The notes: generated by a model from the sequence alone, not told the origin. Counted from the stretch's first letter, positions 18,679 through 63,832 are shown. The stretch: 64,000 nucleotides of DNA from Schmidtea nova (GCA_044892505.1 CM097883.1:439952001-440016000), one strand, 5' to 3'. A program made the numbers and translations.

Positions 18679-18884
18679 TGTTAAATTATATTCAAATAAA
18701 AACTGCTTCCGTAATAATTTGTCTTATTCGAACAAATTTCAAATGGCGAATTAATCAATTAAATAATAACGACAATTATGCGTGCCAGCATTTATACTTT
18801 TAATAATTTGACTATATAATAAAATTGATTACTTATAATACAATATATGTTATTTATAAAATAGTTAATTAAATATCCCTAACA
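18679..18884 (-). repeat. 3' LTR (206 bp)
   Basis: Direct repeat of 20594-20799 with 3 substitutions seen by eye. Ends TGTT..AACA. Confidence 0.92.
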
Positions 18885-19625: not shown

Positions 19626-20593
19626 CTCTCGTCTGCGTATCTTCTTCTGTCTGCCTGGTTCCAGTATTGAAATCGCAAATGCCCTCTTCTACCGCATCCT
19701 GAGCAAGATATTGATGGACATTCTCTTCTATTATGTCCGATATCTTTACACGCGAAACATCTCATCTCTGCATTCGATGCTCTCTGATTGCACTCTCTGG
19801 ATTTGTGCCCTTCTTTTCCACATTGGAAGCATTTCTGAATCCTTGGTTTCCGACATTCTCGACTCATATGACCCACTTCCTGGCAATTCCAACATGTAAT
19901 AACTGGTCTGTTTCTAGCAGGCATTTCTCTTTGTTAGAAGTTATTCAGGTTGTTATCTGCTTTTATCATCGGTCTTGAATCATATCTTTGTTCAATCCTT
20001 TCTGTATTTGTAAAATTTCGCCTTTGGTTCTGTCTATCGGCAAATCCCTGTCTTGCTTTGACAATATTCGCAAATGTTTCTTTCTTTCTATTTAAAACTG
20101 AAATTCTCGACGCTTCAATATTTATATCATTGACCTTCTTTATCACTCCTTTTATTTCATCGACGCTTATCGCATCTCTCATCTTTATTTCTTTCTGTGT
20201 ATCTTTGTCTTTGATACAATGGACCAAAAAATATGACATCAATTCTTTCTTGTCCCATTTGTGTTTTAGAACTTGGTCAACCATCTTTTCTATTTTTTCA
20301 AAATATAGTGGGGCAGTATCCTCGTTTTTTTCGTAATTGCATCGGGTTAAAAAATCCCCTATCAGCGTCGTTGGTTTCTTGAAAGCCTTTTTCAATCTGT
20401 CTTCAAAGCAAGTTTCATTTTCTTCTATTGCTTCATACATTGGTAACAATTCTCTTTCGATCAAACATTTGATCATTATATTTTGGCTGGACTGTTCTAG
20501 TCCACATAATTGGAAATATCTCTTGCATTCTCCAATAAATATTTCTACATCGACGCTGCCGTCGTAAATATCTGGGATCATTTTATTGATCAT
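19547..20593 (-). pseudogene. gag: Gag (capsid-like region + 3-4 CCHC zinc knuckles) with in-frame TAA at 19934-19936
   Basis: ORFs 19934-20593 and 19547-19924 are in the same frame, separated by TAA CAA AGA GAA. Knuckles: CWNCQEVGHMSREC, CFQCGKEGHKSREC, CFACKDIGHNRREC and degenerate CSGCGRRGHLRFQY. Confidence 0.85.
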
Positions 20594-20815: not shown

Positions 20816-21583
20816 TTAATCAATTTTTATTAAATATAAAATAGCCTGCAGAGTATGAACTTCTGTCACTGGATCCACAAAGTTATACTTGTGACAGACA
20901 GTTCGATGTGTAAAGCCCTTTGCAGGCAAGCGGCTGTAACTCCGATGTTCATCAGTATGGATAATACTTCCCTCCACAACATGCTCACATATAACAGGTA
21001 TTATGGTATCAGCACGCTTATCAGGTATCATCTGTGCCCATACCTTTGCGACGCAACGATTGCATTCAACAATACAGAGGGCATCCATTCTGTTTTCAGG
21101 TGAACGACCCTTATGACTTTTGCATTTGTAATTGAGCGTGGTTTCGTCCACTTGAACAACAGTCCCGGCGCCCCCTAGCTTAGTCAAAAGTTTGTTGGAT
21201 GTTTTAATTCTGTCGATTAACAATGCGTTTATCTTGCTATATGTCGGCGAAGATATGCGTATGTCTCTAAGAATTGAACATCGAGTTTGTCCATTGGAAA
21301 TATGAATAAGCACTTTAAGTACTTTCTTCGTTTCTGTTGCCAATGATTCGAAAAATGAGCCATCTCTAACAGACCTTCTCTTTTTGTAGGCTTTGCATTT
21401 GTTGGAATAACACCTCCAAACCATATCAATGGCATAACTCTTTGACTCTTCAAGCTTAAGAGATGACCCACATGAACTCAGGCATTGCATGCTGCGGAGG
21501 AAGTAACTATGCTGAAACATCCAGGTAATTAACGACTTTTTAGGCATTGTAATAACTGATTCTTCCAATATTTCCAAGTTCAT
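20816..21583 (-). pseudogene. Merlin/ISXO2 (IS1595-like) DDE transposase, C-terminally truncated
   Basis: Motifs VVQVDET, IPDKRADTIIPVI..V..GSIIHTDEHRSY..L, HRTVCHKYNFVDPVTEVHT. The expected following xxIExxW motif is missing. Confidence 0.85.
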
Positions 21584-23613: not shown

Positions 23614-24319
23614 TGCAGTTTACACATATCGAGCCAATTGTTTCCTTCTGTATCAATTCTTACTTGCCAAATAAATGTAATGGAAATGGCTGCATGTATT
23701 GCAGATTTTGTTCAAGGTAAGACAGAAGAACTGGAGTTAGAAATTTTGGAACTTAAGAATGATATTTTGCTAAAATCCTTAATATCAAAGGACTTTTGGA
23801 ATACAGTGGACAGAGAAAAGTTTCCATTTTCTAAAAAAGCGGCATTTAAAATTGAATCATTTTTTGGTTCGACATATTTATGCGAATCATTATTTTCACA
23901 TATGAACTTAATAAAATCAAGAAATAGATCTCGACTCACCGATGAGCATCTGTATGATTGTTTGCTAACAGGATTATCGTCATACTCTCCTAATTATGAG
24001 GAACTGGCCAATGATATGCAATGCCAAAGATCACATTGACATATCGATAATATATTTTTTATAAAATGTTTTCTTCGTATTTGTGTTTTTTGTTTACGTT
24101 TTGTAAATACATTTCTCTGAGTGTATGTAATTTGAATAATAATTTTATTATTTTGAAACATTTTTGTTTATTATTTATTAATAAATTATGAATATAAGAA
24201 AAAAAATTATGGGAATGAGAAGTTATGGAAGGAGTTTGTTGATTAAAAATAGGTGGTGCCCGTCACCCTACCGATATTTTAGAATGTGCTCTAGAGTACA
24301 AAAAGGTTGGGAACCCCTG
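23614..24319 (+). mobile_element. 3' fragment of a hAT (Charlie/SPIN, GTF2IRD2-like) transposon
   Basis: ORF 23638-24039 contains FGSTYLCESLFSHMNLIKSRNRSRLTDEHL..CQRSH*. Right TIR AAAAGGTTGGGAACCCCTG ends at 24319. Flanks CTCTACAA (23606-23613) / CTCTACAT (24320-24327). Confidence 0.85.
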
Positions 24320-40025: not shown

Positions 40026-41444
40026 ATGCGTTAATATAAATAGGTTATGAATTNNNNNNNNNNNNNNNNNNNNNNNNNNNNNNNNNNNNNNNNNNNNNNN
40101 NNNNNNNNNNNNNNNNNNNNNNNNNNNNNNNNNNNNNNNNNNNNNNNNNNNNNNNNNNNNNNNNNNNNNNNNNNNNNNNNNNNNNNNNNNNNNNNNNNNN
40201 NNNNNNNNNNNNNNNNNNNNNNNNTAGGCTATAATTAATAAAGACAACTACCACCTATGTTTTTATTTTATTACATACTGCATTCGAATGGAAAAAATAT
40301 AAAATTAATGATATAACCAACAGAATAGAATAATAGCAAAAATTTACTAAAACTGCTCCCCATTAAAGGCTTTATCCAGATATAACCTCATATGGCCATA
40401 GAATTCGTCAAATACAATGCCTGCATCATCGTTTATCTCTGATATCGCGCTTTGGACATAATTTTTTATCGTTTCGGTAGAATCAGGTATGGGCCTTCTG
40501 TGGAAGTATCTACTTTTCAAACACCAAAAGAACTCCTCTATTGGGTTCAATCGAGGAGAATACGGCGGAATAAAATCGTATGAAATATTGTTTTCTGCAA
40601 AAAATTGCCGAACTGACGTGGTCTTGTGGAATGATACATTATCCATGAGAACTATCTTATCGCTTCCGAAAAAATTCATGTTTAAATATTCCCTTAAAAT
40701 AAGCTTATAACTTTCTGAATCATACACACCGACTATATTTTTGCAATATAAAACCTTCTCGTTCGAAATTAGACACATACAACTAATATTCGGCCGCGTG
40801 GAGGGGACAGGAACATTTACTGGCACGTTCTTCGGAGAATAACCATACTAATACATGGTATGCAGTTTAAATCCCGTCTCATCAAGGTACAAAAGGCGAG
40901 AGTTTGGAATATTTCGGTATTTTATTGCAAATGCTTTTCTTTCCAAAATAATTCTTTGTTCTGCCACACGATTCGAAATCTTTTTAATTTTTTTTCGCGT
41001 AATATTGAGTTTTTTCAAATTCCCGGAGACTCCAAATTGAGTAATACTTATTCCATTTTGTTCCAGTTGTTGAATAATTCACCTCTGGGTAGTACGAGGT
41101 TCATTTTGTACGGCCTCCGAAATTTTAATCATGGTATTGCTTAAGTCCTTGACATGACGACTTTTTCTTTTAATTACTGCGCTATAATCAACATCTTTTT
41201 CGTCACATTCTCTTATTTTTTGAAGTGCTTTATAGACAGTCGGTGCAGATATATCAAGTGAAACGGCGATTTTGTCAATTTTATCTCCTTGTAATCGCAT
41301 AATTTTTATTGTTTTAAGATCTTTAGCCAAAATCGCAGTTCTGTGCTTTCTTGAGCGGTCAGTTGATTCGTTATAGTGATTCTCCATTTGCATGGTCTCT
41401 AACTTTGAAAAATATTTCTATAGATTATTTATTTTTTATCATAA

Positions 41445-42345: not shown

Positions 42346-45300
42346 TTAGAATTTTAAAATATTTATTATCGATTAGTAAAATAAAATAATTCATCCTCAG
42401 TGGAAATTACATGCGCAGTTAGATGTTTTAATCAATCAATATCAAGCACCAAAAATTATTTTTATTGATATTCTATTTACAATATCTACCATTTCACACA
42501 ATATAAAGCTATCAAAATCCCATGAGAATTTCTAAAACAAAAGAGTTCCAACAGTCAGCTAATGCAAAATCGAGTGCAGCTTTGATGCAACATTATATTA
42601 TAAGCNNNNNNNNNNNNNNNNNNNNNNNNNNNNNNNNNNNNNNNNNNNNNNNNNNNNNNNNNNNNNNNNNNNNNNNNNNNNNNNNNNNNNNNNNNNNNNN
42701 NNNNNNNNNNNNNNNNNNNNNNNNNNNNNNNNNNNNNNNNNNNNNNNNNNNNNNNNNNNNNNNNNNNNNNTTGGTAGCAGCATTAAGTATTAAATTAATT
42801 AATAAATAAGTAACAAAATAAGCCTTTGCTGCAAAAATAATTTTATTAAATGAGAAAATTTTCGATTATCAAATAATCCTCGNNNNNNNNNNNNNNNNNN
42901 NNNNNNNNNNNNNNNNNNNNNNNNNNNNNNNNNNNNNNNNNNNNNNNNNNNNNNNNNNNNNNNNNNNNNNNNNNNNNNNNNNNNNNNNNNNNNNNNNNNN
43001 NNNNNNNNNNNNNNNNNNNNNNNNNNNNNNNNNNNNNNNNNNNNNNNNNNNNNNNNNNNNNNNNNNNNNNNNNNNNNNNNNNNNNNNNNNNNNNNNNNNN
43101 NNNNNNNNNNNNNNNNNNNNNNNNNNNNNNNNNNNNNNNNNNNNNNNNNNNNNNNNNNNNNNNNNNNNNNNNNNNNNNNNNNNNNNNNNNNNNNNNNNNN
43201 NNNNNNNNNNNNNNNNNNNNNNNNNNNNNNNNNNNNNNNNNNNNNNNNNNNNNNNNNNNNNNNNNNNNNNNNNNNNNNNNNNNNNNNNNNNNNNNNNNNN
43301 NNNNNNNNNNNNNNNNNNNNNNNNNNNNNNNNNNNNNNNNNNNNNNNNNNNNNNNNNNNNNNNNNNNNNNNNNNNNNNNNNNNNNNNNNNNNNNNNNNNN
43401 NNNNNNNNNNNNNNNNNNNNNNNNNNNNNNNNNNNNNNNNNNNNNNNNNNNNNNNNNNNNNNNNNNNTCTATTTTTATTTATATCAATAATTTTCATAAT
43501 CGTATGACTATAGCTCAAATTATATTTTTCGGGTTTTTTGGTTATTTAAGTACACAAAATTTCTTTATCAAGGCTGTGACAAAATATCATGTACTAAAAA
43601 AACCAAAAAAGGCAAAAACTGTGATAGTCATACAATTATGAAAATTATTCATATAAATTGTTATTATTATTATTTTTTTATCATTCATTCTATTTTAATG
43701 TATGTTAAATGAAATGAATATAGAAAAATAGATGCTATTTAAATTTAATTTCGTCATATTTATGCATGCAGTTTAGTAATAATTGGGATTAATTTTTAAG
43801 ATTTTAAAAGGAGATAAAAAATAATTTTCGTCAAATTTATTGATTTTTCTATTAGATTTTCTATTGGTTGAATATTTTGCGCTAACGGAATTATGGTCGA
43901 TCGAGTGAAATATCTACAAGGAATAAATACTGTAGAGGATTTCAGTTGAGAGATTTCCTACATTTTGGACGAATGAATTACGAAAATAAATCTTTTATTG
44001 ATTATTTTTTTTATTTAAGTTTTATTGATATTTTCTCGATTACTTTTTCACATTTATGGCGAAATATTTCCGTTTCCAAAAAGAAATTTTCCCCATTTTA
44101 AACTGAGAAAATAATATAATTAATTAAAAATTTTTTAAATTGATTTAAACAAATAATGGAGTTTTTAGAAAATAGAATTTTTCTTTAAGAAACAGACTTA
44201 AAGAGAAAAATATGAAGAATCAATTTGGAAAAAATTTAAAATTTATTTAATATTTTCAATAAAAGATATTAATAAGTTATTAAAAGTTATTAAATGACCG
44301 TGTGATTTATTTTAGTCATACCTGGTAAAATATTCTAAACTTTAGCTTTTATAAATATTCTACTTGAAAAAATAAAAAAAAGATTTAAATTTTAATAATT
44401 AAATATGTCTAGGGTCTTGTTGAGTTCTTCAAGGGTATTTCATAATATGAATTTAAATTTAATATGAATTAATTTCATTTAAACAAATTTTAATGAGATC
44501 GTTGTCAAAATTGCAAAAATCTCTATTCTATTAGGTCAATTATAAAAAAAATATCTTACTCCAAGTATTTCAAGGTCGCCTCTTGGAAAGTCTAGTAAGG
44601 GTACAAGCCTATGAAATTAATTACATTAAAATTTGAAAAATTGACATAATAAAATTCCATATATCTATGCATCCAATAAGTCATAATAAAAAGGAATTTC
44701 TTTTTTGAATAACATGAAAATCTCAAATATGGCATAAATTTGACTGATATTGTCTAATCATTCACCTTTTTGGTAGTCACAGAATTCAAAAAAGCACTGT
44801 CATTTTTATTTTTTATTTTTACGGAAATCTTACTTGATATTATTGTGATGAGTTTTGCACATATTTGTTAAAAATTTCAGAAGTATCCATTCTGTTTTAG
44901 TCCTATCTCTGCTAGAATTCATTTTCTTCGTAAATAGTAACCGCATGCCGTTGAATTACCGTTATGTATAAAATATTTCTGGTCATCCTAGCGTTAATAC
45001 AGTGTGAAATAATAGCCGGTTTTGTGTCAAATTTTAACTACATATTCCAAATTTCATCTATTTTCAGAATATATAATAATTTTTTTTCATAGAATTATCC
45101 TCTTAAAGGTCGTAAAGAAGTTCTCCATATTTTAAAAGGATTGCAAAGCAAGAAAACTTTTGAAAGTTATAAATTAATAATATAATTTCCAAAGGTCACA
45201 GCTCTTTTAAAAGAGCAATTATGTGTGATAAAAATGGATTTATTTCCAAAACAATTATTTAAAAATGAAATGAATAAATGAAGTTTAATCAGGAACATTA

Positions 45301-49140: not shown

Positions 49141-50268
49141 TTACTTAACAACCAAAAAAAAAATTTGATCTATAAGTCATAAAATTATGAAAATTACTGA
49201 ATAATTAACTGAATAATTAACAAATTTGTACAAAATTTATAATTGGAAATTGAAAACATTTTCCTATTTCTAGATCAACCAATTAGAAAATCTTGAGAAA
49301 CCAGATTTGATAAATCTTAAAAGTAAAATGATTTTCTTTAAATTTGTTATTATGATTTCCAATGTATTTCAGAGAATAATAAAACAAACCATTCAACCCA
49401 CAAAGATCCCGACCAAGGAAGGGAGCCCAGATTTCATTCAGACATCAGTACCAAGAGAAATTATAGAGCATCAACAATACTCAGCATATCGGAAACGATT
49501 GCAAATTTTGTTGACAATAAGGTAATAATTCTCTACCACCATCATCATAATAAAATAATAATTTATTTTATTTAAACAAGAAAATTAATTGAAGTATATT
49601 ATAATTAAATTAAGTTTAAAATTTATAAATTTNNNNNNNNNNNNNNNNNNNNNNNNNNNNNNNNNNNNNNNNNNNNNNNNNNNNNNNNNNNNNNNNNNNN
49701 NNNNNNNNNNNNNNNNNNNNNNNNNNNNNNNNNNNNNNNNNNNNNNNNNNNNNNNNNNNNNNNNNNNNNNNNNNNNNNNNNNNNNNNNNNNNNNNNNNNN
49801 NNNNNNNNNNNNNNNNNNNNNNNNNNNNNNNNACAAAACTATATTCTGCACAATATATTTCGAGAACTTCATTCTCATCATCAGGTGCTATTCAGCTAAC
49901 CATTCCAATATAAATCAAATAAATCAATTTTTAAATAAATTGATCATAATTATTTTAAAAATGTAATATAAAATTTTATAAAAATTTTATAAAAGATAAA
50001 ATTATTTTTTTTAATTTAAATAATTAATCTTAAAAATTATATTTTTTTAAGAATATTTTATAAATATTCCCATATTTATAAACAACAGTATAACTGAAGA
50101 CCAACCCCATTATTATCAATTGCCAATGCTATACAACTTGAGTACAGAAAATACCAACAGTCTTCTCCAAAGTATGTAATATTTCGTCCAAGACATTTGA
50201 AAAATTAAATAAGTATAGAATAAAGATCAAAAGAAAAATATGAATAGTCAACAACCACATCAGTTAAT

Positions 50269-50800
50269 TTAATAAAATTTCAAAAATCGAAATAAACACG
50301 CACTCAAAATTCTCACATTCTCATATTTACAAACACCAATATGATTGAAAACAACACTCATCCCCATTAATTTATTATGTTCTGAAACTCGAAAACAGAG
50401 AAGACGGACAGTCTTTTCCAAGATATGTGGCATTTCACCCATGACGTTTGAAAAAATAAACGAGAACAGTACAAAGTGCAATACAGAAATTTTCGAATCG
50501 CCAACAATCACACCAATTAATTCATAAACAATAATAAAAGAAAAATAATCAGCACGAATGCCAACCTCTTCATTAAATAAAAATATAGATTTGACAATAT
50601 AAAGCCTTATAGATTCATGACTAAAAATATTTATCACTCTAGACATAAGCAGTCCAATCAGATGCAATAGACATACCAGGTGATTACGCCTTTCAATCTT
50701 CAATTCTAGAATATTAATCCAAATTCTTTGATCAGTGAATCAAACATCTCTAATCTCTTTAATTAAATGCATTTCCATAAACAGGCTTTCAAGAAATACA
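50269..50800 (-). CDS. Probable host-gene exon(s), helical-repeat-like, unidentified
   Basis: 144-codon ORF whose frame extends upstream (..TDQRIWINILELKIERRNHLVCLL..). No diagnostic motif was found. Confidence 0.35.
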
Positions 50801-52318
50801 GGAACAACAGAAAAATAATTATTTTTCTTCAATACATAATATAACAAACATATTATTAAATGTTACCGGTAGAATTTATTTTGCTAATACCATGCGTCCA
50901 TTTGATCAAGCAACTTGAATCCAAAAAATGTTTATTTTATCTATAACACAATCGTATAACCAAAAGATATTGAAAATTAATAAATATGGGTTTACCCAAT
51001 GATGCTCTGAGAAACAAATACTGTTCTTTTCTAAAATTCTCAGTTATTGCTCCAATGACAAGTTCTGGTTTTGTCTGTTTTCTGAGTCTATATTTTTCAT
51101 GAACTCTCTATTTTTCTGGTGCTGGTCGTATTATTGCCTCTTCTTTACTAGCATTTTGTATCACATCGAATTATTAGTTAAATCTAAAAAATAAATTGGA
51201 TTTTCTCGACTAAGAATGCCACCAGCAGTGGTTTCCTAAAATCATAATTATTAAGAAAAATGGCTGTCAAATTATTTAACTGAGCCTCGTTTTGACAGAC
51301 TGCCAATGTGTTAGTTGCAATTGTCAATATTATTTTCTTTAGGGGATTATCGCCAATACATTTTGAATAATTAATTTTATTGGTGTACTAGAGGAAATCA
51401 TCTCGGTAGCAACCTCGTAACTATTGTGAAACCACCAGTTGCCGGTCACAAAGCAAAGTTGGTAATATGACTAATGGATCGATACTCTCAAAAAGTGAGC
51501 GCTGTTTTCAGAACTCTGATTGGCCGAGTATCTCCATGGGTTCAAAAGCTTTCGACAGAAGACCTATGCTCAATTAATTTATGGTTCCTATATTTGCTGA
51601 GAGAAAATAAAATTTGAATGTTAATTTAACACAATATTCCTTAAATAATTATGAAAAAATTCTTTATCGTCAATACTTATATTATAAAATATTTCAATAT
51701 TTTATTTTCAAAACATATTTCAAAATCATACTAATAGAGCGTAAATCATAATAATGATATTTAAAACAGGCATTCACATGACACAAAAAAATTGAAAGAA
51801 TAAAAATTAATCAAGATATTTATATTAATTCAAAATATTGAAATCTCAATCAACAGTTAAGTCTGACTCAATTTTAAAGTTTTTTACAACTTATTAAAAA
51901 GCACTTGAAAAAGGCAGTGCGAAAAATTTGTGTTGTATAGAATATATTTTTAGATCTATTGTGTTTAGGTCAGTTTCATTTGTCATTCCAATTTCATTAT
52001 TTTCAATATATTCAAGTAAAGTTTTTTGATGGCCAATTTGGCATAAATGTTAAAGTTTTTCGCTACACCAACATTTTTCAAAAACATAAATATAACACTA
52101 AATTCATTTCTCTGTTTTGTTCATTTTATAGAAAAGAGTAAAGCAAAAATAATACAACTGATATAAAGCGAAATATTATTTTATAAACTTCAATTAAATC
52201 ACTAATAAATTCTTCGAAATTATTTATTCTTCAACTTTTTATATAATCACTTTAACATAACATTACAATTCAATTTTCAGAAAATATCACTTCAAATTGT
52301 AAACTACTGTTTTATTTA

Positions 52319-53517
52319 AGTAGGGGATAGTGAGGACTCGAGCACAGTTTTTTCACATAGCAACGGTTGCTCAGGTTAGTACACACACATCAATATATAA
52401 TCCCCGAAGAACACGTTGCCAGGGTAAATACACACACATATATCAATTTATAGTCCTAGTGAAATATGTTGCTAGGGTAAACACACACCAATGTATTTTC
52501 TTCGAGGAAACTGTTTCCAGGGTAAATACACGCAATAGGGTGACTTCCCTGAGGACCTTGTTGCTTGGGTAAACATACATACATACACATCAATATATAA
52601 TTCCTAATGATAGATGTAGTTAAGGTAACTACACACAGCAATATATAGTCCCCGAGGAAGATGATGTCAAGGAAAATACACACAACAATATATAATCCCC
52701 GAGGAACCTGTTGCCAGGGTAAACACATATCAATATATAATCATCGAGGAACCTTTTGATAGAGTAGACACACACATTAAAGTATTGTCTCCTTGGAACC
52801 TGTTGCTAAGGTAAATACGCCATTGTGTAACGACAGTTACTACTGTTGGTAACATCAAAACATGCAACACATTAATTATTACCCGTAACACACACGATAA
52901 CATGTTTTTACTTAATCGAACGACGTTTTTGTTTTAATGTACTGACTAACATTTCGAATAGTTTTTTATTAATTGATAATTTTTGATATATTATATAATT
53001 TTTGTAAAATGATCTTTAGAAAATCGAATATGAGAACTTTGAAAACGGATGAAATGAATGCGAGAATTGTGACAATAGTCGAAATTTTAAAGACGATTCT
53101 ACAGAGTGCAACTACAAGAGCAGATGAAATTTAATAATATTTGTAAACAGAAACAATTATTTTTACATTAAATAAAAAGATTGACACAAAAAAAAAATGA
53201 AAACCCTGAACAATAAAACCGTTTGAAATCTTGACAATACATAAAAACTTTAAAAATAATTAAACATAATAAACTAAAGAAATATAAAACTAAATATAAT
53301 GAAACCAATTATTTTTTTTTAACAAAGTTTTATTCAATACAAATCTGAATTGGATATTTAATTTGAATTGAGAGCTGGATCTGAAACTGGAACACCAACC
53401 TGATCTTTTGATTGGTCTATAAACGAGCCACATCCCTTATAATGTCCGTATGCAAGACTTTCATTTTTATCAACCCAAAGTCTTTTATCATCAAGATTAG
53501 TCAAGGCAATTTTCGAA
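52319..53517 (+). repeat. Left terminal inverted repeat (1,199 bp)
   Basis: Reverse complement of 59045-60243 with no indel (both end-coordinate sums equal 112562). Contains a ~43-bp minisatellite at ~52370-52820. Confidence 0.92.
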
Positions 53518-53560
53518 TATTTATTAGTAAAGAGTTGATGATTTTTACTCACAAATCGAG
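53358..53560 (-). pseudogene. C-terminal fragment of Polinton protein-primed DNA polymerase B
   Basis: TRFVSKNHQLFTNKYSKIALTNLDDKRLWVDKNESLAYGHYK matches the Polinton pPolB C-terminal pattern R-S-x-x-H-x-x-x-T-x-x-x-x-K-x-A-L-x-x-x-D-D-K-R...T/S-L-A/P-Y/W-G-H-Y. Copies occur at 58821-59034 (-) and 59045-59204 (+). Confidence 0.8.
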
Positions 53561-53628
53561 TCTGTTCTACTGAAACTATAGTATTATTTCTAAGTAGGTA
53601 GATGTGTGGAGCCGGGAACAAAGACATT

Positions 53629-53730
53629 ATGACTCATCGATGACTAATAACAAAGACATACCCCCCTCCCCTCCCCCCGGGGTTAGAAATTTTTTTATGA
53701 CTCATCGCGATGACTCATCGATGACTCATT
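53629..53730. promoter_or_regulatory. Cluster of AP-1-type ATGACTCAT motifs (4 copies)
   Basis: ATGACTCAT near 53629, 53697, 53710 and 53721. Confidence 0.5.
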
Positions 53731-53789
53731 TCAAATTCAAATTTTAAATTTGAATTTCCAAAGGTCAAATAAGGTCAAACCTTCAAACA

Positions 53790-54860
53790 AGGGTATCATT
53801 CGAAAGGTCTTGGAGAGGTCTATCCAATGTTCATACCCTCGAAGGCTTATGGAGGGTTCTTGACCGTCGAAGGGTCAAAAACCTTCAACCTTTTTCAAAC
53901 CTTATAATATACATATCATTCGAAAGGTAATTGAGAGGTTAGTAAGATGGTCATACCCTCGAAGGTGTATGGAGGGTCCTTAACCTTCAAAGGGTCAAAA
54001 ACCTTCAACCTTTTACAATCCTTATAATATACATATCAAACAAAAGGTAATTGAGAGTTAAGTATGTTGGTCATACCCTTGAAGGTGTATGGTGGGTGCT
54101 CAACCTTCAACCTTTTACAATCCTTATAATATACATATCATTCGAAAGGTAATTGAGAGGTAAGTAAGATGGTCATACCCTCGAAGGTGTATGGAGGGTC
54201 CTTAACCTTCAAAGGGTCAAAAACCTTCAACCTTTTACAATCCTTATAATATACATATCAAACAAAAGGTAATTGAGAGGTAAGTAAGATGGTCATACCC
54301 TCGAAGGTCTATTGTGGGTCCTCGACCTTCGAAGGGGTCAATAACCTTCAACCTTTTTTAAACATTATAATATATATATCATTCGAAAGGTATTTGAGAG
54401 TTAAGTAAGATGGTCATATCCTCGAAGGTGTATGGTGGGTGCTCAACCTTCAAGGGGTCAAAAACCTAGAAATTTTTTCAAACCTTATAATATATATATA
54501 TCAAACAAAAGGTAATTGAGATATGCACACAATGGTCATACCCTCGAAGGTCTATGGTGGGTGCTCAACCTTCAAAGGGTGCAAAACCTTCAAAAAATTT
54601 TAAACATTACAAGTTATATATTAAACAAAGGGTAATTGAGATGTACACACAATGGTCATACCCTCGAAGGTCTATGGTGGGTGCTCAACCTTCAAAGGCT
54701 CCAAAACCTTCAACCTTTTTCAAACCTTATAATATATATATATATATATATATCATTCGAAAGGTATATGAGAGGTAGGTATGCTGGTTATACCCTCGAA
54801 GGTCTATGGTGGGTGCTCAACCTTCAAAGGGTGCAAAACCTTCAAAAAATTGTAAACATT
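53790..54860. repeat. Tandem array of ~120-bp units (about 9 copies)
   Basis: The core TCATACCCTCGAAGG recurs near 53831, 53951, 54071, 54173, 54293, 54414, 54536, 54656 and 54790. Units contain CCTTCRAAGG palindromes. Confidence 0.9.
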
Positions 54861-54865
54861 ACAAA

Positions 54866-55010
54866 TTTTTTTTTCGCGCCAAAAATTTTTTTCAAAATTT
54901 TTTTTCGCGCCAAAAATTTTCAAATTTTTTTTTCGCGCCAAAATTTTTTTTTTCAAATTTTTTTTTTTGCGCCAAAATTTTTTTTTCAAATTTTTTTTCG
55001 CGCCAAAAAT
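54866..55010. promoter_or_regulatory. Five tandem E2F-like sites (TTTTCGCGCCAAAA x4 plus one TTTTGCGCCAAAA)
   Basis: Directly visible, spaced ~30 bp apart in A/T tracts. TTTCGCGC is the classical E2F consensus. Function is inferred. Confidence 0.55.
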
Positions 55011-55111
55011 TTTTTTTAAAATTTTTTTTTAACAAATTTTTTTAACAAATTTTTTTTAACACAAATTTTTTTAACACAAATTTTTTTTAACACAAATTAA
55101 ATTTTTTATTT

Positions 55112-55210
55112 TTATGACTCATAGATGACTCACCATTATGACTCATCCTTATGACTCATCGATAACTCATTTCAATTTATAAATAAGTCACGTCATCGGT
55201 AACTCATAAC
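55112..55210. promoter_or_regulatory. Second cluster of AP-1-type motifs (3 perfect ATGACTCAT plus variants)
   Basis: ATGACTCAT near 55114, 55138 and 55151. Variants ATGACTCAC, ATAACTCAT and GTAACTCAT, plus TCACGTCAT. Confidence 0.5.
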
Positions 55211-56300
55211 AAAGACATTGCAATCCATGTGCAAAATTAACAAAGACATTGCAATCCATGTGCAACATTAACAAAGACATTGCAATCCACATGCAACGTA
55301 AACAAAGACATTTCATTACCAAATTTAATAACAAAGACGTTTCATTGCCAAATTTCATAACAAAGACATTTCATTGCCAAAAAACTAAACAAAGACATAT
55401 CAATACCAAAATAACTAAACAGAGACACGAACATTTACTAGCAGAACATTTACTATCAGAACATTTACTATCAGAACATCTTTTGTGATGGTTTTTATCT
55501 GCCAAAGCTTATTACTCGAACATTTATTACAATTCAAAGATTATATATGTACTCTTAAACATAGAAATTTTTCATAACAAAGACATATCATTGCCAAAAC
55601 ATCTAAACAAAGACATTTCATTACCAAAAACACCTTAACAAAGACATTTCAATGCCAAAAATAACTAAACAAAGACATTGCAATACATATGCAAGTTAAC
55701 AAAGACATTGTAATGCAGATACTAGTTAACAAAGNNNNNNNNNNNNNNNNNNNNNNNNNNNNNNNNNNNNNNNNNNNNNNNNNNNNNNNNNNNNNNNNNN
55801 NNNNNNNNNNNNNNNNNNNNNNNNNNNNNNNNNNNNNNNNNNNNNNNNNNNNNNNNNNNNNNNNAATGTCAAAACACCTTAACAATACAGATGCAAGTTA
55901 ACAATGACATTGCAATACATATGCAAGTTAACAAAGACATTGCAATACATATGCAAGTTAACAAAGACATTGCAATGTGGATACAAGTTAACAAAGACAT
56001 ACACACAAGTTAATAAAAATATTCAAGGGTTCAAAATTTTTTAAAACTACATAAATATCATGCGAAAGATATTTGAGATGTGTGTGTGTATATTTTCAAA
56101 CCTTCAAGATGTCAAAATAAAATAAAATAATAAAACTACCACAACGTAATATATTTTTATTTTCCTACCCATTTTGACACTGCAATTCATATGCAATATT
56201 AACAAAGACATTGCAAAACAGATGCAAGTTAACAAAGACATTGCAATACAGATGCAAGTTAACAAAGACATTGCAGTTGCAAGCCAAGTTAACAAAGACA
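55207..56300. repeat. ~30-bp tandem repeats with AACAAAGACA core
   Basis: Unit AACAAAGACATTGCAATACATATGCAAGTT occurs in several blocks (55207-55430, 55575-55734, 55890-56000, 56195-56300). Confidence 0.88.
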
Positions 56301-56398
56301 AGATGTCAAAAAAGACTAATTATTATTAATCACAAAGTGCATTCTCTTAGCCAATGATAAAAATAAATTAAATGAAAATACATATATTTTGTATGACA

Positions 56399-56893
56399 TT
56401 ATATGTATATCACATGATATTCATCAATATTAATACCACAAGACTCACACTTATCAATATTTTTTAAACATTTTGAACAAATAATGACATGTCCACAAGG
56501 TAAATATAAAATGCCAACTCTATTTATATTACATATTGAACATGTGAGAAATCTTTGTTTGATTTCTTCCAATTTCTTGGTTACATTTACCTCTAAAATA
56601 TTCACATTCAGCATGAAAGTTCGAATAATAGTACGATATTTTCCATGTCGAAATTCCATACATGACCAGAAAATGGTATTCAAATTGAATTCAGTAGAAT
56701 CGATATCATTAAGAATCATAAAAAAACTGGATAATTTCATCATGGATTTATCATATCCGAATGATTCTGTTAAACCAATAATTAATTTATTATTGAAGGA
56801 TTTGAATAATTTTGAAAGAATGTCGATATCGCATTTCTCAATCGATGTTAAAAGGTCATCAAGTATTAAAAAGGATTGGATCCAATTATCCAA
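56399..56893 (-). CDS. 164-aa protein with C-terminal IAP/MDM2-type C3HC4 RING (putative E3 ubiquitin ligase), Polinton cargo
   Basis: CSIC-x11-CGH-x3-CSKC-x6-CESC followed by a hydrophobic tail (IDEYHVIYI). Intact and intronless. No BIR domain is visible. Confidence 0.85.
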   Translation of the reverse strand: MDNWIQSFLILDDLLTSIEKCDIDILSKLFKSFNNKLIIGLTESFGYDKSMMKLSSFFMILNDIDSTEFNLNTIFWSCMEFRHGKYRTIIRTFMLNVNILEVNVTKKLEEIKQRFLTCSICNINRVGILYLPCGHVIICSKCLKNIDKCESCGINIDEYHVIYI

Positions 56894-57802
56894 AGTAATG
56901 AAATTATCTGTAACCTAGTTTAAAATAATTAATTTAAATATATATTTTTAAAACTAACTTTATTTGTTTCTTTATTTGTTTCTTTATTCATTTTCGTCAA
57001 TCAATACTATTTACAAGTTGTATTTATATTGCAAAAATCAACCAATTTAATAACCAACCATTTTATTGACCAACCAATGATTGAAAGTTTTTGCTAAACT
57101 GTTACATTAAAATGATGATAAGGGACATTGAAAATTAGGTAACAATATATTTATTATTAAAAATATGTTCAAGTAATGAGCTTTTGCACATAAAAACCAT
57201 CACAGAATAGGTTCTGCTACTAGGGTTCTGCTCGCAATGTTCTGCTACTAAATGTTCGGTCACTATGACAAATACATGAAAAATTATCATACTATTGAGA
57301 TAATCACACAAATAATTCTTAAATTATAGTACAAATATATCAAAAATATATGAAATATACATTACATACTTGAAATATTATCACAAAGTATCATTACATA
57401 CATGAAATATCTACATACTTGCTCAATTACACAGAAAATCATCAAAGTTACACACAAAATATGAAAAGTATATAGAAATTCGTCACATACAAAAACACCG
57501 TATATATGAAATATTATCAAAAATACATAGAAATTTATCACACACGTACAAAATATCACCATACTATAGTGTATAACTATACATACAAAATATCAGAAAT
57601 ACAAACATACATAAAATTTCATCTTACTATAGTTTGATAACATAGAAATACATGAAATATCCTCAAAATACAGAAACTTTCACAGATATATAGATTCATC
57701 ATACAAAATATCATATATATAAGAAATATCATTACAGATTATGACATGCATGAAATATTGTTATTATAGTGCAAATTACATAGAAAATAGCAAAGATACA
57801 TG

Positions 57803-59034
57803 AGTAGGGGATAGTGAGCGCTCGGTACCACTTTTTTCACATAGCAACGGTTGCTAGGGTAAATACACACATTATTATGTAATCTCCGGGGAAGAAGTTG
57901 CTAGGGTAAACACACACATCAATATAAATATTCCCCGGGGAACCTGTTGCCATGGGTAAATACACGCTTTAAAGTGTAGTCAATTAAAACATGTTGCTAA
58001 GATAAACACGCGCGTATAGAGTCCCCAAGGAACCTGTAGTTAAGGTAAACACACACACATCATTATATATTCACTGAGGAACCTGTTGCCAGGGTAAACA
58101 CACACACATCATTATATATTCATATAGCCAGATGTTGCTAAAGTTAACACATACACATCAATATATAGTCCTGGGGAAGATATAGTTAAGGTAAACACAC
58201 AGATCAATATATAGTCCCGGGGTAAATACACACATTAAAGTATACTCTCCCTGTAACTATTGCTAAGGTAACCACATGTGTTAATATTTAAGTCCTGAAG
58301 TAACTATTGCTAAGATAAACACACCATTGTGTAACCCCCATGACTACTGTTGGTAACGTCAAAATACACAACATATTAATTATTATCCGTACCACAAACG
58401 AAAACATGTTCTTTACTTAATTAAATGAAATTTTTGTTTGAATGTACTGGCTAACATTTTGAGTAATTGTTTTTTAACTGATAACTTTAGAAAATCGAAT
58501 GTGGCAACTATGAAAACAGATGGAATTAATTCGAGAATTGTGACAATAGTCAAAATTTTAAAGACGATTCAACAGAGTGCAACTGCAAGAACAGATGAAA
58601 TTTATTAATATTTGTAAACAAAAACAATTATTTTTACAATAAATAAAAACGAATTACACAAATCCTTAAAATATTACACTAATCAGGTGAAAACCCTGAA
58701 CGATAAAACCAATTCAAATCTGGACAACACATAAAATTTTTAAAAACAATTAAACATAACAGTCTAAAGAAATATAAAACTAAATATAATGAAACCAATT
58801 ATTTTTTAACAAAGTTTTATTCAATACAAATCTGAATTGTATATATAATTTGAATTGAGAGCTGGATCTGAAACTGGAACACCAACCTGATCTTTTGATT
58901 GGTCTAAAAACGAGCCACATCCCTTATAATGTCCGTATGCAAGACTTTCATTTTTATCAACCCAAAGTCTTTTATCATCAAGATTAGTCAAGGCAATTTT
59001 CGAAAACTTATTAGTAAAAATTTGATGATTTTTA
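57803..59034 (+). repeat. Internal diverged copy of the Polinton terminus
   Basis: Starts AGTAGGGGATAGTGAGCGCTCGG and is colinear with 52319-53545, with many substitutions and indels. It ends in a hairpin with loop 59022-59027. Confidence 0.9.
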
Positions 59035-59044
59035 CTAATAAGTT

Positions 59045-60243
59045 TTCGAAAATTGCCTTGACTAATCTTGATGATAAAAGACTTTGGGTTGATAAAAATG
59101 AAAGTCTTGCATACGGACATTATAAGGGATGTGGCTCGTTTATAGACCAATCAAAAGATCAGGTTGGTGTTCCAGTTTCAGATCCAGCTCTCAATTCAAA
59201 TTAAATATCCAATTCAGATTTGTATTGAATAAAACTTTGTTAAAAAAAAATAATTGGTTTCATTATATTTAGTTTTATATTTCTTTAGTTTATTATGTTT
59301 AATTATTTTTAAAGTTTTTATGTATTGTCAAGATTTCAAACGGTTTTATTGTTCAGGGTTTTCATTTTTTTTTTGTGTCAATCTTTTTATTTAATGTAAA
59401 AATAATTGTTTCTGTTTACAAATATTATTAAATTTCATCTGCTCTTGTAGTTGCACTCTGTAGAATCGTCTTTAAAATTTCGACTATTGTCACAATTCTC
59501 GCATTCATTTCATCCGTTTTCAAAGTTCTCATATTCGATTTTCTAAAGATCATTTTACAAAAATTATATAATATATCAAAAATTATCAATTAATAAAAAA
59601 CTATTCGAAATGTTAGTCAGTACATTAAAACAAAAACGTCGTTCGATTAAGTAAAAACATGTTATCGTGTGTGTTACGGGTAATAATTAATGTGTTGCAT
59701 GTTTTGATGTTACCAACAGTAGTAACTGTCGTTACACAATGGCGTATTTACCTTAGCAACAGGTTCCAAGGAGACAATACTTTAATGTGTGTGTCTACTC
59801 TATCAAAAGGTTCCTCGATGATTATATATTGATATGTGTTTACCCTGGCAACAGGTTCCTCGGGGATTATATATTGTTGTGTGTATTTTCCTTGACATCA
59901 TCTTCCTCGGGGACTATATATTGCTGTGTGTAGTTACCTTAACTACATCTATCATTAGGAATTATATATTGATGTGTATGTATGTATGTTTACCCAAGCA
60001 ACAAGGTCCTCAGGGAAGTCACCCTATTGCGTGTATTTACCCTGGAAACAGTTTCCTCGAAGAAAATACATTGGTGTGTGTTTACCCTAGCAACATATTT
60101 CACTAGGACTATAAATTGATATATGTGTGTGTATTTACCCTGGCAACGTGTTCTTCGGGGATTATATATTGATGTGTGTGTACTAACCTGAGCAACCGTT
60201 GCTATGTGAAAAAACTGTGCTCGAGTCCTCACTATCCCCTACT
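59045..60243 (-). repeat. Right terminal inverted repeat (1,199 bp)
   Basis: Mirror of 52319-53517. The ORF track shows identical mirrored ORFs (52330-52572 vs 59990-60232; 52456-52728 vs 59834-60106). Confidence 0.92.
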
Positions 60244-61432
60244 TATTTATATTTAATATTTTTTGCGAAATTAGTTATATTATTTATTATCATAATTATC
60301 TTTTTTCACCTTTGATCTTTTTTTATTATTATTATCAATAATTCTCATAATGACTATAGATCAAAATTTTGATCTTTTTTTATTATTATTATCAATAATT
60401 CTCATAATGACTATAGATCAAAATTTTTTTTATTTATTATAAATTTATTTTAAAAAGTTTTTTTTTAATTTTAACTAAATTTTGGTCACATTGCTATTTC
60501 AATATTGTCTTAAAACTTTAAAAAATATGAATTTATTATTAAGCCTTATTAAAAATGATCAAAAATGAACATGTTGAATACTAAAAATAGTGATGAGAAT
60601 GAAAATTCTAACAATTCGTTGCAACAATTGTCAAAATTATGTATTTTAGCATATTTACTCTTTTAAGCAGTTCTGCATTAGATTTATCATTAAATGCTTT
60701 ATTCATTCTGCATTACAGTAAACATCATATACTACATATTTAATTTTCATTTTTTAAAGACTATATCAAATTTTTTTCAAAAGGTACACGAATTTTTTGA
60801 AAAAAGTTTGATCTAGTCCATAAAATAAAAATTTCTGATTTAGAAAAAAAAGATCAAAGGTGAAAATAAGAAAGTATTAATAATTGTTTAATGCTATTTT
60901 TCATATTAAGTAGAAGTGTAAAGCAACTATCATGACATTTAATTTAATTAATTAATAAAAAATATTTTTCATTTTTGAAATTGAAATTGAAATTATTTTT
61001 ATCATAATCTTTAATATTCCTTACGTTTTATTTTATTTGATTACATTTATTCATCAGAAAAAATATTCTGTAATGCAAAACAAATTATCGACACTGTTTC
61101 TTTCAAACGTCAATTAACTTTTATGAAAAATTACTTTACCAAATTTTGGCGGGCACTGTCTAATATATATTGTAATGCACAAAAATTGTCATAATTGTCA
61201 TTTTTATAATTTTGATATTATGTTGGTGGCGCCGTCATTATTATCGTCGGTGCCCTCGCGGTCACCGAGGACCCCCCTTTTTGTGTTTTGTTTGTAGGAA
61301 AATAATTATCTTTTAAATAATTTTAATTCGAAATTTGAATTTGGCTTACTATGGCAAATGCTGTAGTAAGCCAAATAACAAATTAAAAAATATTGATTTT
61401 AGAAATTAAAAATTGGAATAAATTATTTGCGA

Positions 61433-61725
61433 ATTAAAGTTTATCAAAATAAATTCACGAAAAAAAGCCGAAGACTATCGAAAGTCAAACTTTATATTGA
61501 AAATAATTAATCCCAAGATAGTTGTATTGGTGGATTCCGGCCAAAATCTGAACAAATTGTCCTTGCAAGCATATTAAAAGCATATTAAAGTTTATCAAAA
61601 TAAATTCACGAAAAAAAGCCGAAGACTATCGAAAGCCAAATTTTATTATGAAAATAATTAATCCCAAGACAGTTGTATTGATGGATTCCGGCCAAAATCT
61701 GAACAAATTGTCCTTGCAAGCATAT
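61433..61725 (+). repeat. Tandem duplication, period 151 bp
   Basis: ATTAAAGTTTATCAAAATAAATTCACG.. begins at 61433 and at 61584. A third partial motif encodes KTINPKKVVLVD. Confidence 0.85.
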
Positions 61726-63832
61726 AAACTGAAAACAATTAATCCAAAGAAGGTTGTATTAGTTGATCATGATAAAAATCCAAACAAATTATTTCTAACG
61801 AGCGAAAAACTGATAATAATAACTAAAAAAAGTAACTTTTTCGTGGTTTTGTTGTTATTTGATTTAATTAATTTTTCAAAATACAATTTTTATAAGCCAA
61901 TAATTGGTTATTATTTTTGTACCTCCAAGCATACACACGCACGCAAGTACCCCTACAGACAACTAACAACACAGCATTCACCCGGAGTGTTTACACACGA
62001 TTTACGTAAGACTCTCTCGGGCTCTACAACCTCTTATAACACTTCAACATATCCATACTCACGCATTCACAACATATATAATAATAAAAGGACGTACATA
62101 ATATATATGTATGTGTGTATGTGTGTAACGCTGTATGATTATCTACCGATTATTATAAGTAATATATAAATTTGTTAAAAATAATTTATTATTATAATAA
62201 AAGATATTGAATTAAAAATTCCAAACTATATTTGTAACGCCTGAAAATGGTGCTCCGATTATTTGAAGTAAAAATCAATTTTTATTATGGACTCTGTTCT
62301 TTATCATTATGAGTTGATAAAAGTGAATTAGAAAAATAAAAGAAGGAACATTGATTTTAAATGCATCAGATAATTATGTATTTTAATTGATATATAAACA
62401 AACGCCTGTCATTTTTACAGGTTATAGATAGTTGTTTAATAAATTTTAATTTCGATTATATTTTCTTGAAATCACATTTTAAGTTTATTATCGAAACTTT
62501 ACGAATCAAAATGTGAAATGTTCCCGGCTAATAATATGGCGTTGAATAGATTGCAAATGTCAAATTTGATTCTGCTGTCGTGGTCTCACTCATATGGGCT
62601 CATTCAATTGAAAATCTGGTTCATTATTGACAGGAAAATTGTCAATTTCTCAATTGTTCAAAATATTAATTTTTCACTTATGGAAAATTTATTAAAATTA
62701 TTACTATATTATTTTTGGTGACAAAATTCAAAAAGTCGCACCAAATGAAATTTTAAAAATTTAATTTTACGATGAGAATATTTTAACAAAAATTAATTTT
62801 CACTGGAAAAACAGAAAAAATTCCCGGTGTAGTGATAAACATTTACGATGAACAATATTCGCCGGTCATTTATCCATATCAGCTGTTGATTTTGGTTTTT
62901 TGTTGCCCTAAAATCCGAAAAATCGTTTTAGTTATTTCCGGAACTTGAAATTTCTAAAAAGCCTTCTACCAACAGTAAAGAAATACACAAACTTCTTAAT
63001 GTGTAACAATAAAATAATATATAAAATTATAAATATCTGAAATTTTAAAATAAAAAACTCGAAATAAAAGATTTTTAAAAAATCTTTTAAGATTATTTTA
63101 TATACAAAGAATAGAATATTAAAATGTCAAATTTAATATATTTAAAATTATTTTATAATAATTAAAAAACTCATAAAAATTAAAAAAATTTTAGATATTA
63201 AAATGATCTAATTTCTATCCAATTTAAATGCAGATACTTTACTTGAAAGAAATACACGTTTACGAGTATTTGATGTTGTTTTTTATTTATTTTTAAATAT
63301 TTTTTTTAATGGTGCTACCANNNNNNNNNNNNNNNNNNNNNNNNNNNNNNNNNNNNNNNNNNNNNNNNNNNNNNNNNNNNNNNNNNNNNNNNNNNNNNNN
63401 NNNNNNNNNNNNNNNNNNNNNNNNNNNNNNNNNNNNNNNNNNNNNNNNNNNNNNNNNNNNNNNNNNNNNNNNNNNNNNNNNNNNNNNNNNNNNNNNNNNN
63501 NNNNNNNNNNNNNNNNNNNNNNNNNNNNNNNNNNNNNNNNNNNNNNNNNNNNNNNNNNNNNNNNNNNNNNNNNNNNNNNNNNNNNNNNNNNNNNNNNNNN
63601 NNNNNNNNNNNNNNNNNNNNNNNNNNNNNNNNNNNNNNNNNNNNNNNNNNNNNNNNNNNNNNNNNNNNNNNNNNNNNNNNNNNNNNNNNNNNNNNNNNNN
63701 NNNNNNNNNNNNNNGATGGGCGTCCGCCAATATACTATCATAATTATCTTTTTTCACCTTTGATCTTTTTTTATTATTATTATCAATAATTCTCATAATG
63801 ACTATAGATCAAAATTTTTTTTTTTATAAACA

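What the first reader, a model, noticed from the sequence alone, without database searches (positions are those of the whole stretch)
52319..60243. Compact non-autonomous Polinton/Maverick that has lost its replication and integration genes but kept an E3-ligase cargo
Seen: AGTAG ends, an exact 6-bp TSD (TATTTA), 1,199-bp TIRs without indels, only the last ~50 codons of pPolB, and one intact gene (RING). Established: Polintons have AGTAG/AG-type termini, long TIRs, 6-bp TSDs and pPolB; autonomous copies are typically ~15-20 kb and add integrase, ATPase, protease and capsids. Inference: this is a recently inserted satellite or defective element mobilised in trans. It seems to have kept its cis ends, a regulatory block and one host-interaction gene.
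Basis: partly seen in the sequence, partly recalled or inferred. Interest (0 to 1): 0.85.

Follow-up and report, generated by a model that had tools for sequence, protein, structure and literature searches.

The report
Gene-poor Polinton shell with three ends
This is a 7.9-kb stripped-down copy of a virus-like Polinton/Maverick transposon that keeps only its ends, three dead stubs of its polymerase gene, tandem repeats and one small RING-finger gene, and it matters mainly as a tidy example of how such elements shrink, fold back on themselves and carry a passenger gene.

Summary
At 52319-60243 there are AGTAGG...CCTACT ends and an exact TATTTA duplication on both sides. The inverted arms are identical for 1,199 bp, or 1,213 bp with two mismatches.

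The 89-codon ORF at the inner edge of the left arm matches the extreme C-terminus of 1,142-1,414-aa proteins of the protein-primed family B polymerase family (PF03175). No other part of that polymerase is in the window. No integrase, ATPase, protease or capsid gene was found.

One gene looks intact: a ~180-aa protein with an IAP-type RING and a confidently modelled six-helix N-domain that has no known relative. Only two homologues were found among 5.8 billion protein clusters.

It has its own AGTAGG end and abuts the right arm head to head, making a 2.4-kb imperfect palindrome. The junction looks like a fold-back at a short inverted repeat. Tandem repeats make up 55% of the interior, and the assembly gap lies inside a non-coding 30-bp minisatellite.

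Best reading: a non-autonomous Polinton derivative inserted as one unit. Recent insertion, mobilisation in trans and any role for the RING gene are untested.

The parts
52313..52318 (.). Left copy of the 6-bp target-site duplication (TATTTA)
52319..60243 (+). Whole element, 7,925 bp as assembled. The true length is uncertain because of the gap.
52319..53531 (+). Left terminal inverted repeat (L arm). It is exact against the right arm to 53517, with 2 mismatches after that.
52359..52371 (.). 13-bp palindrome about 40 bp from the terminus. It sits inside a 24-bp block that is identical in all three arms, so it is a candidate protein-binding site (inference).
52383..52820 (+). Subterminal array of about nine 45-50-bp repeats in the L arm. 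The mirror copy is at 59742-60179.
   Evidence: found only in the three arms
53358..53627 (-). pPolB remnant 1: C-terminal tail only. There is one truncation and everything upstream is missing. It reads outward toward the left terminus.
53629..53729 (+). Cluster of four ATGACTCAT motifs
53794..54867 (.). Tandem array, 120-bp unit, about 9 copies
54859..55098 (.). T-rich short-period repeats
55114..55159 (+). Cluster of three ATGACTCAT motifs
55207..56300 (.). 30-31-bp minisatellite blocks that enclose the gap
55735..55864 (.). Assembly gap (N run, length estimated) inside the minisatellite. Not filled and not looked up.
55428..55526 (+). About 100-bp inverted-repeat block a. Its partner is at 57163-57258.
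   Evidence: (I13)
56399..56914 (-). RING gene, main exon. It is open from 56914, with 171 codons plus a stop.
56420..56545 (-). RING domain (PF13920, IAP type)
56959..56991 (-). Candidate first exon of the RING gene (ATG plus 10 codons), followed by a 44-nt GT..AG intron. This is a hand model and the exons were not joined.
   Evidence: residues either side of the junction match P0001
57163..57258 (-). About 100-bp inverted-repeat block b, 170-270 bp upstream of the candidate RING start codon
57803..59036 (+). T3, a third and diverged terminal arm in the orientation of the L arm. It has a complete AGTAGG terminus and its own subterminal repeats (57850-58201). Identity to L is 67-81% in the outer part and 95-97% in the inner 300 bp.
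58821..59036 (-). pPolB remnant 2 (tail only), inside T3. It has one truncation, three residue changes against remnant 1 and one altered stop.
59022..59027 (.). 6-nt centre of the T3 | R palindrome. The adjoining arms 58798-59021 and 59028-59251 are 98% complementary.
   Evidence: (I2)
59031..60243 (-). Right terminal inverted repeat (R arm)
59031..59204 (+). pPolB remnant 3 (tail only), inside the R arm. It has one truncation.
60244..60249 (.). Right copy of the 6-bp target-site duplication (TATTTA)

Best explanation
This is a non-autonomous derivative of a Polinton/Maverick, inserted here as one unit.

Shown: the element carries the end structures of that family. These are an AGTAGG terminus, a 24-bp block with a 13-bp palindrome shared by all three arms, about nine subterminal 45-50-bp repeats, and 1.2-kb inverted arms. 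An exact 6-bp duplication flanks it. Each arm ends inward in the last ~57 codons of a protein-primed polymerase gene that reads outward, and the left copy runs on for about 30 more codons. The rest of that gene and every other core gene are absent.

Inferred: integration, and any replication, must have depended on an integrase and a polymerase supplied by a complete relative elsewhere in the genome.

The right end is a fold-back. An older or foreign version of the arm (T3) meets the right arm head to head at a 6-nt centre. That centre sits at a short inverted repeat which the left arm also has in imperfect form. This is the mark of a broken end that annealed on itself and was copied back. From the terminus inward the right arm follows the left arm at all 330 informative sites. 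It switches to the T3 version only in its innermost 17 nt. So either its outer 1.2 kb was recopied from an L-type arm, or the two outer arms are kept alike while the internal one drifts.

The passenger is a small gene, probably of two exons, for an IAP-type RING protein. It is presumably a ubiquitin ligase whose substrate-binding part is a new six-helix domain. What it does for the element or the host is unknown.
For: Ends, duplication and arms.

Family hallmarks from the literature: PMC8097293 reports 6-bp duplications, arms of 46-1,447 bp and (AGT)2/(ACT)2 or (AG)3/(CT)3 end motifs linked to jumping-back priming.

Polymerase tail.

No other core gene: Pfam on all interior ORFs of 50 aa or more and tblastn with nine full polymerases.

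Third arm and fold-back junction.

RING gene.

Precedents: gene parts inside Polinton arms (preprint 10.1101/2025.02.07.637071); intron-bearing cargo next to an arm, and the polymerase 3' end abutting an arm, in nematode Mavericks (preprint 10.1101/2022.07.12.499685).
Against: Only one copy is visible. No sibling, helper or empty site lies in the 64 kb.

The two halves are joined only by a scaffold gap, in a draft with 12 N runs.

The 1,199-bp exact identity could be inflated by assembly collapse of the arms.

The end motif AGTAGG matches the published vertebrate (AGT)2 motif at 5 of 6 positions, not 6.

Pfam itself does not recognise the 89-aa tail. The link to PF03175 goes through full-length relatives.

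Interior remnants shorter than 50 codons or badly decayed would have been missed.
Confidence: 0.75

Rival explanations
1. Two unrelated Polinton leftovers bracket ordinary host DNA. One is a solo left end with a polymerase stub. The other is a separate 2.4-kb fold-back element (T3 plus the R arm). The RING gene and the satellites between them would be resident host sequence, and the matching TATTTA would be a coincidence.
For: T3 has a complete terminus of its own and forms a self-contained palindrome with the R arm. The RING gene lies just outside T3. The local sequence is very AT-rich, so short matches are more likely than the window average suggests.
Against: An exact 6-mer match has a probability of about 7e-4 at window composition and a few per thousand at local composition. 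The T3-R pair has no duplication of its own: TACATG on its left against TATTTA on its right. The R arm is identical to the L arm, not to T3, at all 330 informative sites, which ties R to L.
Confidence: 0.12
2. It is an assembly artefact. The perfect mirror arm, or the link between the halves, was created by repeat collapse, gap filling or a wrong scaffold join.
For: The draft assembly has 12 N runs in 64 kb. A gap lies inside the element. Identity of 1,199 of 1,199 bp is unusually clean.
Against: Each arm lies inside an uninterrupted contig, with unique flank on one side and unique interior on the other. The arms diverge at their inner ends in a structured way, not abruptly. The same minisatellite runs into the gap from both sides. 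The duplication matches. The neighbouring palindrome is only about 77% alike overall, so it is not a missed-adapter mirror.
Confidence: 0.08
3. It is a member of another transposon group with long, internally repetitive inverted arms (Foldback-like or Galileo-like) that happens to have picked up a polymerase fragment.
For: The arms are long and internally repetitive. The structure includes a fold-back. Galileo/Foldback-type arms are described in PMC3573991 (listed).
Against: The polymerase tail sits at the same distance from the terminus in all three arms, so it is part of the arm and not a stray pickup. A 6-bp duplication and AG...CT ends are the Polinton signature (PMC8097293). No transposase of any kind lies inside.
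Confidence: 0.03

Closest known systems
Polinton/Maverick elements, for example the intact vertebrate Mavericks of PMC8097293
   Same: 6-bp target-site duplication. Long inverted arms (1.2 kb here; the published range is 46-1,447 bp). An AG...CT terminus that nearly matches the (AGT)2 motif. Sequence derived from a protein-primed family B polymerase.
   Different: It is 7.9 kb against about 17 kb. It has no complete polymerase and no integrase, ATPase, protease or capsid gene. The polymerase tail reads outward and lies inside the arm, whereas the vertebrate modules read inward. A third internal terminus is present.
Nematode Mavericks with cargo genes (preprint 10.1101/2022.07.12.499685)
   Same: An intron-bearing passenger gene of non-viral type is carried between the arms. 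The polymerase 3' end abuts an arm.
   Different: Those elements are largely complete and carry protease or kinase cargo with ubiquitin-like domains. This one is a shell whose only gene is a RING protein, and no evidence of transfer between species was sought here.
Butterfly Polintons with gene-bearing 2-kb arms (preprint 10.1101/2025.02.07.637071)
   Same: The inverted arms extend into coding sequence, so each insertion holds duplicate gene copies.
   Different: There the arms hold whole capsid and protease genes of active elements. Here they hold a dead polymerase stub.
Internally deleted non-autonomous DNA transposons. Non-autonomous Polintons are listed in Repbase by my own recollection, which I did not verify here; the concept is mentioned in PMC3014272.
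   Same: The ends are kept and the enzymes are lost. A duplication shows past integration.
   Different: Open literature on non-autonomous Polintons is very thin. I found no description of a copy with a fossil third terminus and a fold-back junction.
IAP-family E3 ligases (XIAP, cIAP1/2)
   Same: A C-terminal RING of the same subtype (PF13920). It matches XIAP/cIAP RING chains at E about 1e-8 and superposes on them at about 3 angstrom over about 60 residues.
   Different: It has no BIR domain. The N-terminal six-helix domain has no sequence or fold match in the PDB or in BFVD.

Membership tests
Polinton/Maverick | 6-bp target-site duplication | tested here: met
   TATTTA on both sides. The feature is described in PMC8097293 and PMC3014272.
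Polinton/Maverick | Long terminal inverted repeats | tested here: met
   1,199 bp exact, 1,213 bp with 2 mismatches
Polinton/Maverick | 5'-AG...CT-3' termini with a short reiterated end motif | tested here: met
   AGTAGG...CCTACT. This matches the published (AGT)2 motif at 5 of 6 positions. T3 conserves the first 16 nt.
Polinton/Maverick | [quoted passage not shown] | tested here: met
   The tail matches the C-termini of PF03175-family proteins.
Polinton/Maverick (autonomous) | Encodes a complete pPolB | tested here: not met
   Only three tail stubs. tblastn with nine full polymerases finds nothing else in 64 kb.
Polinton/Maverick (autonomous) | Encodes a retroviral-type (rve) integrase | tested here: not met
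   No rve hit inside the element. The only rve in the window, at 18879-19586, sits next to a zinc-knuckle ORF and looks retrotransposon-like.
Polinton/Maverick (autonomous) | Packaging ATPase, adenain-like protease and jelly-roll capsid genes | tested here: not met
   No Pfam hit in any interior ORF of 50 aa or more. Decayed fragments are not excluded.
Non-autonomous derivative of an autonomous family | Shares its termini with a complete element in the same genome | not testable with these tools
   The host genome is not at hand, and fetching outside Maverick loci was barred.
Non-autonomous derivative of an autonomous family | Multiple copies with different insertion sites | not testable with these tools
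   No second copy in the window.
IAP (inhibitor of apoptosis) proteins | At least one BIR domain | tested here: not met
   Pfam finds only the RING. The PDB profile search matches only residues 104-172.
RING-type E3 ligases | C3HC4 RING domain above the curated threshold | tested here: met
   PF13920 at 37.6 bits against a cut-off of 27. The domain is conserved in both homologues.
Death-fold (CARD/DD) plus RING proteins (considered because of the six helices) | N-domain superposes on a death-fold structure | tested here: not met
   Foldseek against the PDB returns only RING matches, and none at E<=1e-3.
Foldback-like elements | Long, internally repetitive inverted arms | tested here: met
Foldback-like elements | Target-site duplication longer than 6 bp (7-9 bp by my own recollection) | tested here: not met
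   The duplication is exactly 6 bp. Extending it to 7 bp fails.

The most novel reading that the evidence does not exclude
The element may represent a lineage of mini-Polintons that persist as passenger-gene vehicles. In that reading the fold-back made a new working end. The outer arms are repeatedly refreshed from whichever complete relative is currently active, while the internal arm is a fossil of an earlier partner. The orphan RING ligase would be retained because it acts on a host or helper protein, for example to blunt a cell-death or silencing response, to the benefit of the element.
Probability: 0.15. Interest if true: 0.7.

Novelty: new variant of a known kind. Interest (0 to 1): 0.45.

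Why it matters
Polintons are usually studied as complete 15-20-kb virus-like elements. Their defective, dependent forms are barely described in the open literature.

This copy shows in one place four things: how far such an element can be reduced while still showing a clean integration footprint; that the arms can include the polymerase 3' end; that a fold-back at a short inverted repeat can rebuild an end; and that a non-viral, intron-bearing gene can be the only surviving passenger.

If siblings exist, the contrast between the two identical outer arms and the diverged internal arm would give a direct read-out of how the ends of protein-primed elements are kept alike. The RING protein also defines a very small family with an uncharacterised helical domain.

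Tried and rejected
Searches that found nothing:
- Pfam on the 89-aa tail and on every arm and interior ORF. The polymerase link had to come from the search of 1.84 billion representatives.
- A PDB sequence search with a full-length polymerase relative. A nine-sequence profile gave only a weak endonuclease VII match.
- tRNA and Rfam scans of the window.
- A search for a paralogous empty site using the flanks. The right flank from 60282 is a dispersed short repeat, and nothing spans the insertion point.

Structure of the RING protein:
- Adding the third homologue raised it to 79, with the N-domain above 90.
- The six-helix N-domain as a death fold was rejected. There is no fold match in the PDB or BFVD.

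Small ORF shared by the L arm and T3 (52973-53134 and 58438-58608): differences fall 10/5/4 by codon position, so there is no coding signal.

Failed calls: one call exceeded a size limit (24), one paper is not held and one search term was malformed (39).

- Joining the two RING exons for a search.
- Any look-up of the gap letters.
- Any fetch of outside Maverick loci.
Alignments of the three arms were used for counts only.

Full report

Yes. The window is AT-rich (about 27% G+C) and dense in transposons. It is a draft with 12 N runs.

At 52319 the sequence begins AGTAGG, and its reverse complement ends at 60243. TATTTA flanks both ends. The chance of an exact 6-mer match at window composition is about 7e-4, and moving the boundary by one or two bases destroys the match.

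Two mismatches follow, and similarity ends at 53531/59031.

**2. The gap**

The N run at 55735-55864 lies within a 30-31-bp minisatellite. The minisatellite runs up to the gap from the left (55575-55734) and resumes after it (55883-56000), in the same orientation and at 80-86% unit identity.

No real reading frame crosses the gap, so continuity of frame does not matter for any gene call. What does matter is that the left half (contig 49833-55734) and the right half (55865-63320) are linked only by this scaffold join. The matching duplication and the shared minisatellite are independent support for the join. I did not look up or fill the letters.

**3. The polymerase claim**

Pfam does not recognise the 89-aa ORF at 53358-53627(-). 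A full HMMER pass over 1.84 billion representatives found 96 hits at E<=1e-3, the best at 1.3e-12. Many are short fragments, but nine are proteins of 1,142-1,414 aa in which the match falls at the extreme C-terminus.

Evidence that these proteins are protein-primed polymerases:
- One of them (P0029) scores 2.7e-16 on PF03175, 'DNA polymerase type B, organellar and viral'.
- P0013 and P0029 align over 1,118 residues at 35% identity, and the nine proteins are 28-41% identical to P0029 in a full-length alignment.
- Of the 120 best relatives of P0013, 72 carry PF03175.
- One of those relatives is named as that polymerase by its source, and one is from an insect genome.

So the tail is a genuine pPolB C-terminus.

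tblastn with these polymerases finds nothing else in the 64 kb except three tail copies: in the left arm, in the right arm and in a third place. About 57 codons lie inside each arm. The left copy continues for roughly 30 more codons and then stops matching. In count form, there are three remnants, each truncated once. The internal copy also has three residue changes and one altered stop.

**4.

A third copy of the terminal arm lies at 57803-59036 in the orientation of the left arm. I call it T3. It has a complete terminus: its first 16 nt are identical to those of the other arms. It also shares with them a 24-bp block that contains a 13-bp palindrome, and it has its own subterminal 45-50-bp repeats.

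Identity of T3 to the left arm rises from the outside in:
- 67-81% over the outer 500 bp
- 84-93% in the middle, apart from one gap-rich bin at 76.5%
- 95-97% over the inner 300 bp

T3 abuts the right arm head to head. The stretches 58798-59021 and 59028-59251 are 98% complementary around a 6-nt centre. The right end of the element is therefore a 2.4-kb imperfect palindrome.

T3 and the left arm stay alike for 18 bp beyond the point where left and right arms stop matching. T3 then turns back on itself at a short inverted repeat that the left arm also carries in imperfect form. That is the footprint expected when a broken end anneals on itself at a microhomology and is copied back. This is an inference, drawing on my own knowledge of how palindromes form at short inverted repeats.

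Site patterns add a second point. From the terminus inward the right arm agrees with the left arm and never with T3 at all 330 informative sites. In its innermost 17 nt it is identical to the T3 version, which differs from the left arm at four positions there. Two histories fit:
- The outer 1.2 kb of the right arm was recopied from an L-type arm, primed from the inner homology.
- The two working ends are kept alike while the internal copy drifts or stems from a diverged relative.

One copy cannot decide between them. T3 plus the right arm did not insert here on their own, because their flanks (TACATG and TATTTA) do not match.

**5. The interior**

Between the left arm and T3 (53532-57802), 55% of the sequence is tandem repeat, counting the gap. 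This comprises a 120-bp array of about nine units, T-rich short repeats and the 30-bp minisatellite.

Two clusters of ATGACTCAT flank the 120-bp array and the T-rich short repeats. They hold 7 of the 9 matches in the window, against 0.66 expected. By my own knowledge this motif resembles an AP-1/GCN4-type site. That is a lead, not evidence of regulation.

No interior ORF of 50 aa or more has a Pfam match except the RING gene. Nothing from the element recurs elsewhere in the window. No other window ORF looks like a Polinton gene.

**6. The RING gene**

The frame is open for 171 codons at 56914-56399(-), in DNA where stop codons are frequent. The C-terminal 42 residues score 37.6 bits on PF13920 against a cut-off of 27. 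They match XIAP and cIAP RING chains.

Only two homologues exist among 5.8 billion clusters: P0001 at 49% identity over the full length and P0104 at 43%. Conservation covers the whole N-terminal part, upstream of the first in-frame ATG, so the start codon must lie further upstream.

A candidate first exon (ATG plus 10 codons at 56991-56959) followed by a 44-nt GT..AG intron fits in phase. The residues on either side of the junction match P0001. This is a hand model. I searched the exons separately and left the joined step out.

With three sequences the AlphaFold model reaches pLDDT 79, and the N-domain (residues about 10-115, six helices) exceeds 90. Foldseek against the PDB and BFVD matches only the RING, with nothing at E<=1e-3. 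The protein has no BIR domain, so it is an IAP-type RING protein and not an IAP.

A ~100-bp inverted pair (55428-55526 and 57163-57258) brackets the minisatellite, the gap and the gene. One member sits 170-270 bp upstream of the candidate start codon. It could be a duplicated promoter block or the ends of a nested small element. I saw no duplication around it.

**7. Mechanism**

Shown: the family-type ends, the integration footprint, the absence of enzymes and the fold-back architecture.

Inferred: integration by a retroviral-type integrase supplied by a complete relative, which would explain the 6-bp duplication; replication, if any, by that relative's polymerase primed at the reiterated terminus (jumping back, as discussed for Mavericks in PMC8097293); and the subterminal repeats and the 13-bp palindrome as binding sites.

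Recent insertion is compatible with the identical arms and the intact duplication. It is not proven, because arm homogenisation or assembly collapse would look the same.

**8. Comparison and novelty**

The element meets the structural membership tests of Polinton/Maverick (duplication, arms, end motif, polymerase-derived sequence). It fails every test of autonomy. Gene parts inside the arms and intron-bearing cargo both have precedents.

Non-autonomous Polintons are a recognised concept (Repbase by my recollection) but are hardly documented in open papers. I found no description of a fossil third terminus with a fold-back junction, or of a shell whose sole gene is a RING ligase. I rate it a new variant of a known kind, of moderate interest. 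It rests on one copy, in an unidentified host, from a draft assembly.

**9. Limits and compliance**

The host was not identified. Composition and transposon content suggest an AT-rich invertebrate, but that is a guess.

One slip: early in my reasoning I wrote a remembered approximate polymerase motif.

Noticed in passing
53629-53729 and 55114-55159: Seven of the window's nine exact ATGACTCAT motifs sit in two clusters that flank the 120-bp tandem array and the T-rich short repeats (0.66 expected by chance). By my own knowledge the motif resembles an AP-1/GCN4-type site.
   Followed up: partly
55428-55526 and 57163-57258: A ~100-bp inverted-repeat pair brackets the minisatellite, the gap and the RING gene. 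One copy lies just upstream of the candidate RING start codon. It could be a promoter block or the ends of a nested small element, and it has no obvious duplication around it.
   Followed up: partly
52973-53134 and 58438-58608: A ~53-aa ORF is shared by the left arm and T3. Differences fall 10/5/4 by codon position, so it is probably not coding.
   Followed up: yes
60282-60437, with copies at 63730-63827, 33304-33487, 14495-14544, 27314-27392 and 43468-43528: A dispersed 60-100-bp repeat, partly palindromic and MITE-like, starts 39 bp to the right of the element.
   Followed up: partly
61433-61725: A 151-bp unit is duplicated in tandem at 95% identity.
   Followed up: no
6096-6899 and 40347-40826: Two Tc1/mariner-type transposase ORFs (DDE_3, E 1.6e-22 and 4.4e-17).
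   Followed up: no
18879-19924 (-): An rve integrase ORF with Tf2-type SH3 and p58 C-terminal matches lies directly downstream of a zinc-knuckle (Gag-like) ORF. It looks like a retrotransposon remnant, not a Polinton integrase.
   Followed up: partly
20816-21583 (-) and 23638-24039 (+): An IS1595/Merlin-like DDE transposase ORF and a hAT dimerisation-domain ORF.
   Followed up: no
whole window: Twelve N runs of 130-585 bp and no tRNA or Rfam match in 64 kb. This is a transposon-dense, gene-poor draft region.
   Followed up: yes
proteins P0002-P0012 and others: Many of the best matches to the polymerase tail are tail-only proteins of 85-160 aa on short contigs. They may be assembly fragments, or arm-embedded stubs like the ones here may be common. 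The contigs were not fetched.
   Followed up: no
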